A stretch of 63,801 nucleotides of DNA, the filler included, from Octopus bimaculoides (lineage: Eukaryota): assembly GCF_001194135.2 (NCBI RefSeq). It is 6 parts of 6 records of this genome, joined end to end, with 100 filler letters (N's around TTAATTAATTAA, not from the genome) between each part and the next. Parts side by side here need not be neighbours in the genome. Positions count along the whole stretch, not along the records: positions 1 to 13,392 come from NC_069008.1; 5 more parts are not named here. One strand, given 5' to 3'. Made by a program: the position numbers and the translations under genes. How positions within the stretch are numbered: position 1 is the first letter of the stretch; the number at the start of each line of letters is the position of its first letter. Shown piece by piece: positions 916-9,729 of this stretch. Under the pieces are notes generated by a model. That model searched no databases and had not been told where the DNA came from. It saw only the letters and a list, made by a program, of their open reading frames with translations.

Positions 916-1355
916 AAACATTATACAAATATCCAGCTTTAAAAAAAAAAACCAAATCTTATCAAATATCTATTGGGAGTGGGGATGTGGGCTGTTACGA
1001 ATAATTTGTTTTATTTAATCCTTTACTTGTCCTGTGTATGACATGTGAACTACGGAGCACATTTCGCTGGCCTCCATGCATCCTGTAGGATGTATGCATC
1101 CAATTTGTTTGAAGTACCAGAGTAAGGACTTATGAAAGGAAACAGGGGCTAACTTAAAGTCTGAGAACAAGACTGGATAAAATGGATAAAGGTTAATTAA
1201 AGTTGAGTTTGAAGCATGTAAAATAGAAATATGGATTCCTTGATTTTTGGAAAATCATAAAAGAGTTCCGTAGCTAAATACGTTTTTGGTAACCCTGCTC
1301 TTATTAAAACAAAAAGACAAAGTTATAAACATTCAGACGATGATGAAATACTTAC

Positions 1356-1519
1356 CATTGTTCCATGTGGTTTTCATATCCGTTTTAGAGTAAAAAATTG
1401 TAGGGTTATAGTCTGATTTCGCCCAACTACAAGGAACGGGAGGTTCAGTTATAAAGAGCCAACCCCTGTCTTTTGAGCAAACGTCATGATAGTTTGACAC
1501 ATAGAAACGCCGTTGAGAT
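1356..1519 (-). CDS. Internal exon: SQRRFYVSNYHDVCSKDRGWLFITEPPVPCSWAKSDYNPTIFYSKTDMKTTWNN(G)
   Basis: Strong acceptor (tttttttcttttatcccatacag|) and donor (|gtaagt at 1355). 164 nt, phase 2 to phase 1, open frame. Motif RRF..C..D.GW....C.W....P.+.YS. Confidence 0.88.
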
Positions 1520-3566: not shown

Positions 3567-3634
<68 letters not shown>

Positions 3635-4104: not shown

Positions 4105-4335
4105 NNNNNNNNNNNNNNNNNNNNNNNNNNNNNNNNNNNNNNNNNNNNNNNNNNNNNNNNNNNNNNNNNNNNNNNNNNNNNNNNNNNNNNNNNNNNNNNN
4201 NNNNNNNNNNNNNNNNNNNNNNNNNNNNNNNNNNNNNNNNNNNNNNNNNNNNNNNNNNNNNNNNNNNNNNNNNNNNNNNNNNNNNNNNNNNNNNNNNNNN
4301 NNNNNNNNNNNATCCCTCCCATCGTGATCGTAGCA

Positions 4336-4380
4336 CGAATGGACCCGGATTTCAGGGTTATTTCCCTTCGTCAGCGTCCG
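4336..4380 (-). ncRNA. Type I hammerhead ribozyme motif, copy 1
   Basis: Minus strand reads cggacg-CTGACGA-AGGG aaataa CCCT-GAAA-tccggGTC-cattcg. It has the full catalytic core, a 4-bp stem II, a quasi-palindromic stem III and a GUC cleavage triplet. Stem I pairs 5 of 6 positions. Confidence 0.8.
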
Positions 4381-4684
4381 ATAGCTACAGACCTTCGATG
4401 AGAGATATAAATTCTTGGCAACCTTATGTATATTTTTCCAGTGAAATTCTTCACTGATATCGAAAAAGTGAAAACAAGCAATGTTAATTCTCTAAATGAA
4501 GTATTAACAGTAACTGCACGATAAAGTGAAGTGTATTGCCACTTAAGTGTGGCTGACCCCTAGGGGTGGATGTTACTGTTTTTTTAGCCCCAGGAGGACA
4601 TCTCCTCCAGCTGGCTTATCGACACAATACTGTGTCCTGTTTGTTTTGCCAAGGGAAGTTATCCCTCCCATCGTGATCGTAGCA

Positions 4685-4729
4685 CGAATGGACCCGGATT
4701 TCAGGGTTATTTCCCTTCGTCAGCGTCCG
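4685..4729 (-). ncRNA. Type I hammerhead ribozyme motif, copy 2
   Basis: Identical to copy 1, 349 bp away. Confidence 0.8.
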
Positions 4730-5033
4730 ATAGCTACAGACCTTCGATGAGAGATATAAATTCTTGGCAACCTTATGTATATTTTTCCAGTGAAATTCTT
4801 CACTGATATCGAAAAAGTGAAAACAAGCAATGTTAATTCTCTAAATGAAGTATTAACAGTAACTGCACGATAAAGTCAAGTGTATTGCCACTTAAGTGTG
4901 GCTGACCGCTAGGGGTGGATGTTACTGTTGCTTTAGCCCCAGGAGGACATCTCCTCCAGCTGGCTTATCGACACACTACTGTGTCCTGTTTGTTTTGCCA
5001 AGGGAAGTTATCCCTCTCATCGTGATCGTAGCA

Positions 5034-5078
5034 CGAATGGACCCGGATTTCAGGGTTATTTCCCTTCGTCAGCGTCCG
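5034..5078 (-). ncRNA. Type I hammerhead ribozyme motif, copy 3
   Basis: Identical to copy 1, 698 bp away. Confidence 0.8.
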
Positions 5079-6887
5079 ATAGCTACAGACCTTCGATGAN
5101 NNNNNNNNNNNNNNNNNNNNNNNNNNNNNNNNNNNNNNNNNNNNNNNNNNNNNNNNNNNNNNNNNNNNNNNNNNNNNNNNGTAAAGTTAAGATAAATGAT
5201 GCAAGTATTATTGATAACCTTTCTGTAATCAATATCGATTATAGAGTTATCATTTTCATATTCTCCGGACAACAATCGTATTGTTTGAAAATGAAACCTG
5301 CCCTTTCCAGTTCATTAACACAAAACTTGCTGTGGTATAAAGAAAAGAAACCAGAAACGCTGAAACTTGTATTGTTGTTACAAAATCAATTGTTTCTTTT
5401 GTGAGTTTGTTGCGTGAAGCTTGCATATAATAAATAGCTTAACTTTAGACACTGCTTAAGTTATAGAATTCATTTTTCTCTTGTCATGTCTACACTTGTT
5501 TTTTTCTGTTTATTTTACAATGTTGCAGCCTACACACTTCTTTTTATACTTAAAGTCAAATTATTTAGCCCTAGGTTGTAATATCCTACGTGATTTATTT
5601 CACTATTATTTCAGGTTATTCTACATATTTCAGTTAAAATTCATACTGTACCTGTCACCATAAATATACAGGTCTCTTTTCATTGTCATTTTGATAAACA
5701 CTATCTTTCTCCGTCAGATTATCAGTGATTTCGTTTAGTGACAATCATTCTTCTTGCCTTTCCCTCCAGTCAAGTTAATATACTTAGAGTGGAATTGAGA
5801 TTATTATAAACTGTAAGTTATTACCAGAAGCGATTATTAATACTTACCATCGTAATCTATTTAATTCAACTCTGTTTAGTATTCATTTACTACATCTATA
5901 ATATTCTATCAGATTCTTTTATTCTTTTTCAGAGATCATTTGTCTAGTCTATTATAGATTCTGTATATGAGGGGCACTCTATCACTATTTATCTGATCTA
6001 TTAGAGATCATCTTATCTACCGATATAATAACTATTGGTATCACATCTATCTTCTTTTAGGGACCATATATTTCAAGCCTTCACTACAGATCGTGGGCCT
6101 CCTGTTTTTTTTCACTCTTCTGTCATTCCATATTTAAATATATCCAGGTATTGCAATATCACTGATATTTTATTGGTTTATATTTTATATATTACAAAAC
6201 AATATATATATATTCATATCAATACTTGATGTCTTCTGTTCTTTAGCTTTTTACTGTTGATGTTGTTTATTGTCATGGTACCCTTCAAATCTTTTCCAGA
6301 AATTACAAGAAATCCAATTAAAAATTTTTATTTAAGCAACTAAATTTCTTTCAACAATTTCTTTTCTCTTAAGCGTCAGGTACGTACAAAAAAAAAATGC
6401 TTATAAACGATCACTGTGCATAGACTATGCTAAGTAGTCAAATACTGGGGCATATAGGCCCTCGACGGAAAAAGTGCTTTTTCTTCTAATATGCCTCAGT
6501 ATTAGACTATTTACCTTAGTCAATGCATGGCGATCGCTTATAAGCTTTAAACTTATAAATATTATTATTATTATCATTATTATTATTATTATTTTATGTT
6601 TGACTTTTGTTTTGCATTTGTACAAGTTGGATCCAAGTCTCACCCAGAGACCTCAAGAGACAACAAGTTAGAAGTTCATGTAGGTGTTATGCCTAGGGTA
6701 CCATATATTTGGATTTGTACAGTTTTGTTCAAGTGAATGTTTAAGAAACCATAAGAAAATTATGTGTTTGCTTTAAAATTTGAGATCACATAGACAGTAT
6801 TTTACGTAGGATATGGGCAGTTCCCATGAGCACTATCTTTTGAACTTCTGCCATTTTGGGGTTTCCTGGAATCTGATCTAGGTAGTA

Positions 6888-6888
6888 A

Positions 6889-6970
<82 letters not shown>

Positions 6971-8456: not shown

Positions 8457-9110
8457 TTTTACTCCACCTCACTAATTCAAGTATAACAGGTGAACAAACA
8501 AGTAGATTATTACACAGATATGTATACATGTCACTGGCCTTCTCTCTCTCTTTCCCTCTCTCTCCCCCTCTCTCATACACCTTCTTTCCTACCTCATATA
8601 TTAATACCATTCCACCCCTTTTGCTCTTTATCTCCTTTCCTTCATACCCTGCCATTATCTCTTCCTCTCCTGCTCCACATTATCTCTTTCTCACTCTCTC
8701 TCTTTCTTTCTCTTATTCCCCCGCCCTCTATCTATCTGCCTCTCTCTCTATCTATCTGCCTCTCTCTCTATCTATCTGCCTCTCTCTCTATCTATCTGCC
8801 TCTATCTATCTATCTGCCTCTCTATCTATCTATCTATCTATCTATCTGCCTCTCTCTCTATCTAACTGCCTCTCTCTCTATCTATCTGCCTCTCTCTCTA
8901 TCTATCTGCCTCTCTCTCTCTCTCTATCTATCTGCCTCTCTCTCTATCTATCTGCCTCTCCCTCTATCTATCTGCCTCTCTCTCTATCTATCTGCCTCTC
9001 CCTCTATCTATCTGCCTCTCTCTCTATCTATCTGCCCCTCTCTCTATCTATCTGCCTCTCTCTCTATCTATCTGCCCCTCTCTCTATCTATCTGCCTCTC
9101 TCTCTCCTTG
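8405..9110. repeat. (CT)n/(CA)n and ~20-bp TCTATCTATCTGCCTCTCTC minisatellite
   Basis: Directly visible. Explains the Ser/Leu ORFs at 8490-9529. Confidence 0.95.
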
Positions 9111-9201
9111 CACTGTGGCTCTCACTCAATGTTTTTCTCCCTCTCTGTCTCTCTCTTCTTTCCTTTCTCTCTATCACTCTATCCCTCACTCAGTCCCTTT
9201 G

Positions 9202-9235
<34 letters not shown>

Positions 9236-9729
9236 ACTCTCACTCTCACTTTCTCTGTCGCTGTCAGTATCTCTCTCTCTCTCCTCCTCTTTATCTGTCG
9301 CTTTATGTTTGCTTCCCCTCTTTTTCTCTCCCTCACCCACTCTCTTACCTTCTCTATCCCTGTCTCTCTCTTACTAAACATATGCATATCTTTTTATTAC
9401 ATTTGTGCCCCCCTCTCAGTCTTTCATTCCTTTTCCTCTCTCCTTGAATCCCACCTCCTTATATATTACTCTATCACTTCACCTCTCGTGCTTTCTCTCT
9501 CACACATACGCGCATACAATCTCGCGTGAAAGCTATGAAGTTCTAAGGGAGGCTATAACTTTCTTAGAACTACATATATATAATGATTTATCTCCCTTAA
9601 CACAATCGTTATAAATTTTCTCAAACATTTAATTACATAATTACTTCGTAGTTCATAATTTATATAATTAAATAATCTGGGCATTGAAGAACAGGTTAAG
9701 AAAGAATTTTGTTATAGTTGGTTTCACAT

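What the first reader, a model, noticed from the sequence alone, without database searches (positions are those of the whole stretch)
4312..5099. 349-bp tandem array with one type I hammerhead ribozyme per unit: candidate octopus non-LTR retrozyme (circRNA-producing) locus
Seen: units of exactly 349 bp differ at about 5 positions, and each carries an identical minus-strand motif CTGACGA-stem II (AGGG/CCCT)-GAAA-ATCCGGGT-like quasi-palindromic stem III-GUC at 4336-4380, 4685-4729 and 5034-5078. Known: metazoan non-LTR retrozymes are tandem repeats of a few hundred nt with one type I hammerhead per unit, and self-cleavage releases monomers that circularise. Minimal hammerheads with palindromic stem III, as in Penelope-like elements, cleave as dimers, which a tandem array favours. 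Inference: this is a retrozyme array that could yield a 349-nt linear or circular RNA. I do not know of one described from this lineage. Stem I has one mismatch, so activity is not guaranteed.
Basis: partly seen in the sequence, partly recalled or inferred. Interest (0 to 1): 0.92.

Follow-up and report, generated by a model that had tools for sequence, protein, structure and literature searches.

The report
Hammerhead-ribozyme tandem repeat (retrozyme-like)
A 349-bp DNA repeat carries, once per unit, a sequence that fits the self-cutting "hammerhead" RNA, so it looks like a retrozyme, a known kind of animal mobile element that spreads through small circular RNAs; it is a new example rather than a new kind, and its activity is untested.

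Summary
Positions 4312-5099 hold 2.26 head-to-tail units of exactly 349 bp. The two full units differ at 5 positions. Each unit carries an identical minus-strand type I hammerhead, with cleavage after C at 4342, 4691 and 5040.

Helix I continues through a 3-nt/1-nt internal loop into a 5-bp distal helix and then a long closing stem. This matches experimentally active amphibian and mussel retrozyme ribozymes, not the minimal Penelope-type variant.

Supporting evidence:
- The chance expectation is 1.4e-5 per window.
- A covariance model built only from four validated retrozyme hammerheads ranks the three sites first (13.4 bits).
- Unit size, GC (0.42), absence of ORFs and a strongly self-paired monomer (z about -5 to -6) meet the published retrozyme criteria.

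Caveats:
- No Rfam hammerhead model matches.
- Helix I has a C·A mismatch next to the cleavage site, and 10.1-11.1 is A-U.
- A competing hairpin is 13 kcal/mol more stable than the monomeric catalytic fold. A double hammerhead in tandem transcripts is far better.
- The array sits between assembly gaps.
- I found no other copies, no expression data and no way to verify the taxon.

Verdict: probable new member of a known kind, of moderate to low interest.

The parts
4312..5099 (-). Tandem array of 2.26 units of 349 bp. It is cut at both ends by assembly gaps. The functional strand is inferred to be minus.
   Evidence: TRF period 349, 98% matches, no indels. There are 5 differences between the full units. 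GC is 0.42 against 0.38 for the window.
4330..4388 (-). Hammerhead domain, copy 1 (59 nt): distal helix I GUAGC/GCUAC, internal loop UAU/U, proximal helix I CGGACG/CAUUCG, core CUGACGA...GAAA, helix II AGGG/CCCU with loop AAAUAA, helix III A-U and U·G capped by CCGG. Cleavage falls after C4342.
   Evidence: Covariance model R1 hit at 4335-4377, 13.4 bits.
4679..4737 (-). Hammerhead domain, copy 2, identical to copy 1. Cleavage falls after C4691.
   Evidence: R1 hit at 4684-4726, 13.4 bits.
5028..5086 (-). Hammerhead domain, copy 3, identical to copy 1. Cleavage falls after C5040.
   Evidence: R1 hit at 5033-5075, 13.4 bits.
4342..4690 (-). Predicted 349-nt monomer RNA released by cleavage at 4691|4690 and 4342|4341. 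Helix I continues into a closing stem of about 40 bp that brings the two ends together.
   Evidence: Linear MFE -109.1 kcal/mol, z = -5.1. Circular MFE -107.7, z = -6.2, 62% of bases paired.
4691..5039 (-). Second predicted 349-nt monomer. It differs from the first at 6 positions, all outside the hammerhead domain. G23->A changes G·U to A-U in the closing stem.
   Evidence: Circular MFE -106.2, z = -6.5.
4105..4311 (.). Assembly gap (207 N) on the left of the array.
5100..5180 (.). Assembly gap (81 N) on the right of the array.

Best explanation
This is a genomic copy of a non-LTR retrozyme-type element: a short, non-coding, AT-rich tandem repeat with one type I hammerhead ribozyme per unit on the minus strand.

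Shown in silico:
- The repeat itself.
- A complete hammerhead core with type I topology and a canonical metazoan layout.
- Helix I continuing into a long closing stem.
- An unusually stable, self-paired 349-nt monomer.
- A palindromic helix III that gives an 8-bp intermolecular helix.
- A double-hammerhead conformation in a dimeric transcript that is about 18 kcal/mol better than two single hammerheads.

Inferred, by analogy with the coral, mussel and axolotl retrozymes:
1. The minus strand is transcribed as a multimer. Pol II or read-through is the likely source, because the minus-strand unit contains TTTT and TTTTT runs that would stop Pol III.
2. Neighbouring ribozymes pair as double hammerheads and cut after the GUC at each unit.
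3. [quoted passage not shown]
4. The closing stem holds the ends together for ligation by a host RtcB-type ligase into a circular RNA.
5. In the monomer or circle, the ribozyme segment refolds into a stable alternative hairpin (5' GGAC with GUCC) that buries the cleavage site and protects the circle.
6. A reverse transcriptase from autonomous Penelope-like elements copies the circle into multimeric cDNA, which reinserts as a tandem array.
For: - Repeat.
- Core and helices. The layout parallels four experimentally self-cleaving retrozyme hammerheads from the supplement of PMC7229834. These include the mussel's palindromic hexamer helix III (CGCGCG against UCCGGG) and the axolotl's 6-bp helix I plus 3/1 internal loop plus distal helix.
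- Chance: the descriptor gives 0 hits in 39 Mb of shuffles and an analytic 1.4e-5 per window.
- A covariance model built only from the four validated ribozymes ranks the three sites first (13.4 bits, rough E of 0.04; next best 9.1 bits).
- Operational retrozyme criteria (TRF repeat, HHR in at least 2 consecutive units, motif MFE below -5 kcal/mol) are met, with a motif MFE of -14.8.
- GC 0.42 and a 349-bp unit fit 'about 300 bp, GC <45%'.
- No ORF with a Pfam match and no tRNA in the window.
- Monomer fold z = -5.1 linear and -6.2 circular. This is at least as structured as the validated coral (-2.9) and mussel (-0.9) units.
- Helix III duplex is -9.7 kcal/mol, within the range of validated ones (-4.6 to -13.4).
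- Double hammerhead -121.8 against two single hammerheads -103.5 kcal/mol.
- The literature documents that internally looped helix I extensions and dimeric cleavage are features of amphibian type I hammerheads.
Against: - No Rfam hammerhead family matches at the gathering score, or at E<=10 on the window, the array or the 74-nt segment.
- The 10.1-11.1 pair is A-U instead of the highly conserved G-C. A validated axolotl ribozyme does tolerate U·U there.
- There is a C·A mismatch at helix I position 1.2/2.2, next to the cleavage site.
- The monomeric catalytic fold lies 13.2 kcal/mol above the MFE, against 3.1-7.4 for the validated controls.
- Only three copies are available and they are identical, so there is no covariation or conservation evidence. 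The lack of differences within the ribozyme is not significant (about 0.33 by chance).
- The contig is flanked by gaps.
- No other copies were found in the window or in the searchable collections.
- No Penelope-like RT is present in the window.
- No expression data are available.
- A few chance motifs per Gb-scale genome are expected.
Confidence: 0.65

Rival explanations
1. This is a relic. The repeat descends from a retrozyme or hammerhead-bearing satellite, but this variant is catalytically dead or very slow. The causes would be the C·A mismatch beside the scissile bond, the A10.1-U11.1 pair and the dominant alternative hairpin. The locus would then be inert satellite DNA that yields no circular RNA.
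For: The gap between the catalytic fold and the MFE is about twice that of validated ribozymes. No Rfam hammerhead model matches. Helix I is weakened. No second locus or expression evidence could be found.
Against: The units are 98-99% identical, which suggests recent amplification or homogenisation. The double-hammerhead form is energetically accessible. Mussel and axolotl ribozymes with non-canonical loops or a U·U at the base of helix II are active. All core nucleotides are intact in all three copies.
Confidence: 0.22
2. This is a chance hammerhead-like motif inside an ordinary satellite with no ribozyme ancestry.
For: The descriptor is expected about 1-5 times per Gb-scale genome by chance, and the finding was selected from a large scan. 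The three occurrences are one event copied. Rfam is silent.
Against: The per-window expectation is 1.4e-5. The motif sits in a repeat of the size, GC content and non-coding nature typical of retrozymes. Features not in the descriptor are also present: a distal helix I with 3/1 internal loop, a long closing stem, and a fold z of -5 to -6. The independent covariance model ranks the sites first.
Confidence: 0.05
3. This is part of a Penelope-like element: tandem pseudo-LTR fragments of an autonomous element whose ORF is hidden in the gaps.
For: Penelope-like elements carry type I hammerheads with palindromic helix III in their pLTRs. They form partial tandems and often break short-read assemblies.
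Against: The ribozymes are 349 bp apart rather than about 3 kb, and no ORF lies between them. The gaps are only 207 and 81 N. The window holds no RT or GIY-YIG remnant. The ribozyme lacks the Penelope min-HHR traits: helix II of 6-8 bp, a bulged nucleotide after A9, helix I of 4-5 bp, and no helix III.
Confidence: 0.05
4. This is an assembly artefact: a single-copy sequence falsely duplicated in tandem, or a contig misplaced in the scaffold.
For: The 788-bp contig lies between two N gaps and starts and ends inside the repeat.
Against: The two full units differ at 5 positions, and the third unit differs at another. At least two or three distinct copies were therefore assembled head to tail within one contig. 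Contigs that break at both ends inside a repeat are typical of a collapsed, longer array. Misplacement in the scaffold would not change what the array is.
Confidence: 0.03

Closest known systems
Metazoan non-LTR retrozymes, especially the Mytilus galloprovincialis 350-390-bp family (Cervera & de la Peña 2020, PMC7229834)
   Same: [quoted passage not shown] Helix II is 4 bp with a 5-6-nt loop. Helix III is A-U plus a palindromic hexamer (mussel CGCGCG, here UCCGGG). The monomer is self-paired.
   Different: There is no sequence similarity, even within the ribozyme. Here 10.1-11.1 is A-U, helix I has a C·A mismatch and a strong competing hairpin exists. No expression or cleavage data exist for this one.
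Amphibian satellite 2 / axolotl retrozymes Rtz_331 and Rtz_353
   Same: The units are 330-350 bp. Helix I is 6 bp, followed by a 3-nt/1-nt internal loop and a distal helix (Ax353 CAGC-UUC-ACCUCA/UGGGGU-U-GCUG; here GUAGC-UAU-CGGACG/CAUUCG-U-GCUAC). A weak helix III with a palindromic loop favours cleavage as dimers.
   Different: The lineage and sequence differ. The amphibian helix I is fully paired, and the loop 1/loop 2 contact nucleotides are documented. Here that contact cannot be assessed.
Minimal hammerheads of Penelope-like elements (Cervera & de la Peña 2014; Lünse et al. 2017)
   Same: Both are type I with palindromic helix III and dimer-dependent cleavage. Both are tied to retroelements, and these elements are the presumed source of the RT that mobilises retrozymes.
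   Different: Penelope min-HHRs have helix II of 6-8 bp with a bulged nucleotide, helix I of 4-5 bp and little or no helix III. They lie in pLTRs about 3 kb apart around an RT-GIY-YIG ORF. None of that is seen here.
Schistosoma Smα and related hammerhead-bearing SINE-like repeats
   Same: Both are non-autonomous, repeated, non-coding elements with a canonical type I hammerhead.
   Different: Smα is described with a promoter followed by the ribozyme, as a SINE-like element. Here the minus-strand unit has TTTT and TTTTT runs, no tRNA-like part was found, and no promoter was identified.
Avsunviroidae and viroid-like circular RNAs (such as the ASBVd double hammerhead)
   Same: Both use a hammerhead to process multimers. 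Both can form a double hammerhead when helix III is weak, have a branched self-paired monomer, and adopt an alternative fold that silences the ribozyme in the circle.
   Different: This element is encoded in genomic DNA as a tandem array. The ribozyme is in one polarity only, and there is no evidence of RNA-to-RNA replication.

Membership tests
Hammerhead ribozyme, type I | Conserved catalytic core CUGANGA / GAAA(Y) / (R)UH | tested here: met
   CUGACGA ... GAAAU ... GUC|C in all three copies. This matches the filter 'CUGANGA / GAAAY / RUH' used in PMC7229834.
Hammerhead ribozyme, type I | Three helices around the core, with the open end at helix I | tested here: met
   Helix II is AGGG/CCCU (4 bp). 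Helix III is A-U and U·G capped by CCGG. Helix I has 6 positions (4 Watson-Crick pairs, one G·U and one C·A mismatch) plus a distal 5 bp. The helix I mismatch is a caveat.
Hammerhead ribozyme, type I | G10.1-C11.1 pair at the base of helix II (highly conserved in canonical hammerheads) | tested here: not met
   Here the pair is A10.1-U11.1. It is a frequent feature, not an absolute one: active axolotl HHR_Amex2 has U·U at this position.
Hammerhead ribozyme, type I | Match to the curated Rfam hammerhead models at the gathering score | tested here: not met
   No hammerhead family matches at the gathering score or at E<=10, even on 74 nt alone. No positive control with validated retrozyme ribozymes could be run through that tool.
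Hammerhead ribozyme, type I | Recognised by a structure-aware model of experimentally active metazoan type I hammerheads | tested here: met
   Covariance model R1 (4 validated sequences) gives 13.4 bits and a rough E of 0.04. The three sites are the top three hits; the next best is 9.1 bits. The score is modest.
Hammerhead ribozyme, type I | Loop 1-loop 2 tertiary contacts | tested here: inconclusive
   The geometry is present: a UAU/U internal loop in helix I and an A-rich 6-nt loop 2 (AAAUAA). The specific contact nucleotides are shown only in figures I could not read. The mussel ribozyme lacks most of them and is still active.
Hammerhead ribozyme, type I | Covariation or conservation of helices and core across copies | tested here: inconclusive
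   Only three copies are available and they are identical. All 6 inter-unit differences lie outside the ribozyme, but that has about a 0.33 probability by chance.
Hammerhead ribozyme, type I | Site-specific self-cleavage | not testable with these tools
   This needs in vitro transcription of monomer and dimer constructs.
Metazoan non-LTR retrozyme | Short tandem repeat (about 150-450 bp unit, dimer to multimer) | tested here: met
   349 bp in at least 2.26 copies, truncated by gaps.
Metazoan non-LTR retrozyme | [quoted passage not shown] 2026 pipeline) | tested here: met
   Three consecutive motifs. The 45-nt motif has an MFE of -14.8 kcal/mol. That MFE structure is the competing hairpin, not the catalytic fold. 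The criterion is given.
Metazoan non-LTR retrozyme | Low GC (<45%) and no ORF, LTR, PBS or PPT | tested here: met
   GC is 0.42. The unit has no ORF longer than 74 aa, and a composite query of its translated frames (which include stop-to-stop stretches with no start codon required) had no homologue. The units abut directly with no LTR. PBS and PPT were not searched specifically.
Metazoan non-LTR retrozyme | Monomer predicted to form a stable, highly self-paired structure | tested here: met
   z = -5.1 linear and -6.2 circular.
Metazoan non-LTR retrozyme | Many dispersed copies in the genome, co-occurring with Penelope-like elements | not testable with these tools
   The source genome is not searchable here. 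There are no other copies in the window and no RT in the window.
Metazoan non-LTR retrozyme | Expression as linear and circular RNA of unit length | not testable with these tools
   This needs RNA data or experiments.
Penelope-like element pLTR hammerhead | Ribozyme in pLTRs flanking an RT-GIY-YIG ORF (about 3 kb spacing) | tested here: not met
   The spacing is 349 bp with no ORF or Pfam domain.
Penelope-like element pLTR hammerhead | min-HHR architecture: helix II of 6-8 bp with a bulged nucleotide, helix I of 4-5 bp, helix III absent or minimal | tested here: not met
   Helix II is 4 bp without a bulge. Helix I is 6 bp plus 5 bp. Helix III is 2 bp plus a tetraloop.

The most novel reading that the evidence does not exclude
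It would produce an abundant 349-nt circular RNA through a double hammerhead. Its ribozyme variant (A10.1-U11.1, a C·A next to the scissile bond, and a built-in off-switch hairpin) is invisible to the Rfam models. If so, Rfam-based annotation undercounts such elements.
Probability: 0.3. Interest if true: 0.45.

Novelty: new member of a known kind. Interest (0 to 1): 0.3.

Why it matters
If active, the locus would add a lineage to the list of animals that make small ribozyme-processed circular RNAs. It would also give a natural example of a hammerhead that curated covariance models miss. That is useful for improving ribozyme and retrozyme annotation and for tracing the link between retrozymes and Penelope-like elements. 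It would not change the current picture. Retrozymes are already documented in cnidarians, a bivalve mollusc, amphibians and many invertebrate phyla, and type I hammerheads have been counted in a cephalopod genome annotation.

Tried and rejected
- **Rfam.** I ran it at the gathering score and at E<=10 on the window, the array and a 74-nt segment. No hammerhead or other credible family matched; only chance hits appeared, such as SCARNA7 over a TG microsatellite.
- **Degenerate pattern scans.** Scans of the ribozyme pattern gave 3 hits in metagenome contigs, 0 in viral contigs and 1 in prokaryotic genomes. The hits are unrelated soil or bacterial contigs with no helix I and no tandem structure.
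- **Other copies through spurious ORFs.** A composite query of all unit translations against the 5.8-billion-protein collection returned nothing.
- **Taxon check.** A composite query of flank ORFs returned nothing.
- **Coding content.** Ten flank ORFs gave no family above threshold. No tRNA genes were found.
- **Homology.** blastn of the unit against the rest of the window found no other copy. blastn against the validated coral, mussel and axolotl retrozymes found no similarity.
- **Literature.** Searches for octopus or cephalopod hammerheads, retrozymes and satellites turned up only the giant squid Rfam count. Lünse et al. 2017 is not held.
- **Penelope-type minimal hammerhead.** Considered and rejected, because the architecture differs.
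- **Pol III SINE-like transcription of multimers.** Considered unlikely because of the T-runs in the minus strand. Promoter motifs were not scanned systematically.
Full report
**1. The observation**

Tandem Repeats Finder reports one array at 4312-5099 with period 349, 2.3 copies, 98% matches and no indels. Direct comparison gives 5 differences between units 1 and 2, and one between the 90-nt third unit and the other two.

The minus strand reads ...GUAGC UAU CGGACG CUGACGA AGGG AAAUAA CCCU GAAA UCCGGG UC|CAUUCG U GCUAC... once per unit. The 45-nt motif lies exactly at 4336-4380, 4685-4729 and 5034-5078, with C17 at 4342, 4691 and 5040.

It starts and ends inside the repeat. The true copy number is therefore unknown, and its linkage to the flanks rests on scaffolding only.

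**2. Is it more than chance?**

I wrote a descriptor for the canonical metazoan type I hammerhead:
- CUGANGA;
- helix II of at least 4 bp with a loop;
- GAAA;
- a Y...R palindromic helix III of 2-8 nt;
- UH;
- 6-position helix I with at most 1 mismatch and the first pair formed.

It hits only these three sites in the window, only on the minus strand. It gives no hit in 39 Mb of dinucleotide-preserving shuffles.

The analytic probability from the window's composition is 5.3e-10 per position. That is 1.4e-5 per window and roughly 1-5 per Gb-scale genome. The formula reproduced a simulation of a relaxed sub-descriptor (10 observed against 9.9 expected).

So the bare motif can arise by chance a few times in a large genome, and the three sites are one event copied. 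What makes chance unlikely is the conjunction with features outside the descriptor, covered in sections 3 and 4.

**3. Anatomy compared with experimentally active ribozymes**

The supplement of Cervera & de la Peña 2020 (PMC7229834) prints four retrozyme constructs that self-cleave in vitro: coral, mussel and two axolotl. Parsing them with the same code gives the same layout as the candidate:
- Helix II is 4 bp with a 5-6-nt loop.
- GAAA is followed by a palindromic stretch (mussel CGCGCG, axolotl CACGUG or CAUG, coral CAGUACUG, here UCCGGG).
- UC or UA follows, then a 6-position helix I.

Beyond helix I the candidate has a 3-nt/1-nt internal loop (UAU/U) and a perfect 5-bp distal helix (GUAGC/GCUAC). 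This is the same geometry as axolotl Ax353 (CAGC-UUC-ACCUCA / UGGGGU-U-GCUG).

The literature describes this as the canonical metazoan type I hammerhead: helix I of 6 bp, helix II of 4 bp, and helix III of 1-2 bp capped by a 2-4-nt palindromic loop (PMC4209133). [quoted passage not shown]

By contrast, Penelope-like minimal hammerheads have helix II of 6-8 bp with a bulged nucleotide, helix I of 4-5 bp and little or no helix III. The palindromic helix III and the dimer idea are right.

**4. An independent structure-aware test**

I built a covariance model from the four validated ribozymes only, with the type I structure. It ranks the three candidate sites first in the window, at 13.4 bits and a rough E of 0.04. 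The next best hit is 9.1 bits. This is modest support. The model is small and leans on the primary sequence of helix I.

**5. Evidence against a textbook hammerhead**

- Rfam 15 gives no hammerhead match at the gathering score, nor at E<=10 on the whole window, on the array, or on the 74-nt ribozyme segment alone. In that last search an 8.9-bit chance hit to another family is listed. I could not run validated retrozyme ribozymes through the same tool as a positive control.
- The 10.1-11.1 pair is A-U rather than the highly conserved G-C. An active axolotl ribozyme does have U·U there.
- Helix I has a C·A mismatch at 2.2/1.2, next to the cleavage site.
- The nearest-neighbour MFE of the 59-nt domain is not the catalytic fold. 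It is a hairpin in which 5' GGAC pairs with GUCC across the cleavage site. Its energy is -19.2 kcal/mol against -6.0 for the catalytic fold, a gap of 13.2. The four validated controls also fail to have the catalytic fold as MFE, but their gaps are 3.1-7.4 kcal/mol.

**6. Dimer mechanism**

The sequence AUCCGGGU is self-complementary with two G·U pairs. As a duplex it gives -9.7 kcal/mol, within the range of the validated ribozymes (-4.6 to -13.4).

In a double hammerhead, both helix III and helix I form between neighbouring copies. In a dimeric transcript this arrangement is fully nested. Constrained folding of the 408-nt dimeric construct gives:

| Conformation | Energy (kcal/mol) |
|---|---|
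| Double hammerhead | -121.8 |
| Two single hammerheads | -103.5 |
| Unconstrained MFE | -131.3 |

The gap to the MFE is about 4.8 kcal/mol per active site, in the range of the active controls. Cleavage in multimeric transcripts through double hammerheads is thus the most plausible mode. This matches the newt, axolotl and ASBVd cases.

**7. The unit as an RNA**

The 349-nt monomer released by cleavage (minus strand, 4690 to 4342) folds at -109.1 kcal/mol with z = -5.1. As a circle it gives -107.7 kcal/mol with z = -6.2 and 62% of bases paired. The second monomer gives z = -6.5. The validated coral and mussel units give z = -2.9 and -0.9 under the same procedure.

Helix I continues into a closing stem of about 40 bp that brings the 5' and 3' ends together. 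This is the arrangement expected for ligation into a circle. The complementary strand is almost equally structured (z = -4.8), as expected for DNA-level self-complementarity. The fold therefore does not by itself tell which strand is functional; the ribozyme does.

In the monomer MFE the ribozyme segment adopts the alternative hairpin. By analogy with viroid-like RNAs, I infer that this protects the monomer or circle from re-cleavage.

The six differences between the two monomers all lie outside the ribozyme. One (G23->A) turns a G·U into A-U in the closing stem. With so few copies this is anecdotal, with a chance probability of about 0.33.

The minus-strand unit contains TTTT and TTTTT runs. 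Pol III transcription of multimers is therefore unlikely, an inference from the known Pol III terminator. No promoter was identified.

**8. Surroundings**

The window is AT-rich (GC 0.38), full of microsatellites and non-coding:
- No ORF has a Pfam match above threshold, and there is no tRNA.
- There is no reverse transcriptase or GIY-YIG remnant, so the array is non-autonomous.
- No other copy or fragment of the unit occurs in the window.

**9. Related sequences elsewhere**

- Degenerate ribozyme patterns found only unrelated prokaryotic or soil contigs.
- A composite query of all unit translations against the large protein collection found nothing.
- A composite of flank ORFs, meant to identify the organism, also found nothing. 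The taxon 'octopus' is therefore unverified here.
- The unit shares no detectable similarity with the validated coral, mussel or axolotl retrozymes. This agrees with the published statement that unit and ribozyme sequences are species-specific.

**10. Comparison with what is known**

Non-LTR retrozymes are defined as short tandem repeats (about 150-450 bp, GC <45%, no LTR, PBS, PPT or ORF) with one type I hammerhead per unit. They are expressed as self-paired circular RNAs of 170-400 nt and are probably mobilised by Penelope-like elements (PMC7229834, PMC7761336, bioRxiv 10.64898/2026.07.22.740005).

They are documented in cnidarians, a bivalve mollusc and amphibians. They are reported bioinformatically in rotifers, platyhelminths, annelids, crustaceans and insects. 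The giant squid genome paper lists 235 Rfam Hammerhead_1 hits. I found no paper describing a retrozyme in an octopus or any cephalopod, but the searchable library is incomplete.

All in-silico defining features that I could test are met. Expression, circularity, genome-wide dispersal and co-occurring Penelope-like elements could not be tested.

**11. Verdict**

This is most likely a genomic copy of a retrozyme-type hammerhead repeat (confidence about 0.65). A substantial possibility (about 0.2) remains that this variant is catalytically weak or dead. Chance, a Penelope pLTR and an assembly artefact each have a small probability.

It is a new member of a known kind. Interest is moderate to low (0.3). 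The most notable points are a possible first characterised cephalopod example and a hammerhead that the curated Rfam models miss.

Noticed in passing
window 1284-1469, 2328-2513, 1711-1895, 2149-2330: These are interspersed repeat copies. 1284-1469 matches 2328-2513 (94% identity, direct), and 1711-1895 matches 2149-2330 (84%, inverted). The stretch 2149-2513 looks like one composite element whose two halves recur separately. It is unclassified, with no Pfam hit for its ORFs.
   Followed up: partly
window 8683-9283: A CT-rich minisatellite with a 20-bp unit (CTCTATCTATCTGCCTCTCT, about 19-30 copies). It shows extreme strand asymmetry (GC skew about -0.78) and creates long spurious Leu/Ser-rich ORFs.
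   Followed up: no
window 3567-3633, 6889-6970, 2887-2924: Perfect or near-perfect microsatellites: (ATA)22, (TAT)27 and (TG)19. The TG run causes a spurious sub-threshold Rfam SCARNA7 hit at 2793-2957.
   Followed up: no
window 4105-4311 and 5100-5180: The hammerhead array is an island contig between two assembly gaps. This is typical of a collapsed or unresolved longer tandem array, and its neighbours in the scaffold may not be its true neighbours.
   Followed up: partly
window 4679-4737 (and the two other copies), minus strand: The ribozyme segment can fold into a stable alternative hairpin (GGAC/GUCC plus helix II) that buries the cleavage site. This hairpin is the predicted state in the monomer and the circle, and may act as an off-switch.
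   Followed up: partly
L001-L004 (metagenome contigs and a Gammaproteobacteria MAG): The loose pattern CTGANGANGGG(N6)CCCNGAAANCCGGNTH occurs in only 3 of 241 million metagenome records and in one prokaryotic MAG contig. None shows a helix I or a tandem arrangement, so they look like chance matches.
   Followed up: partly
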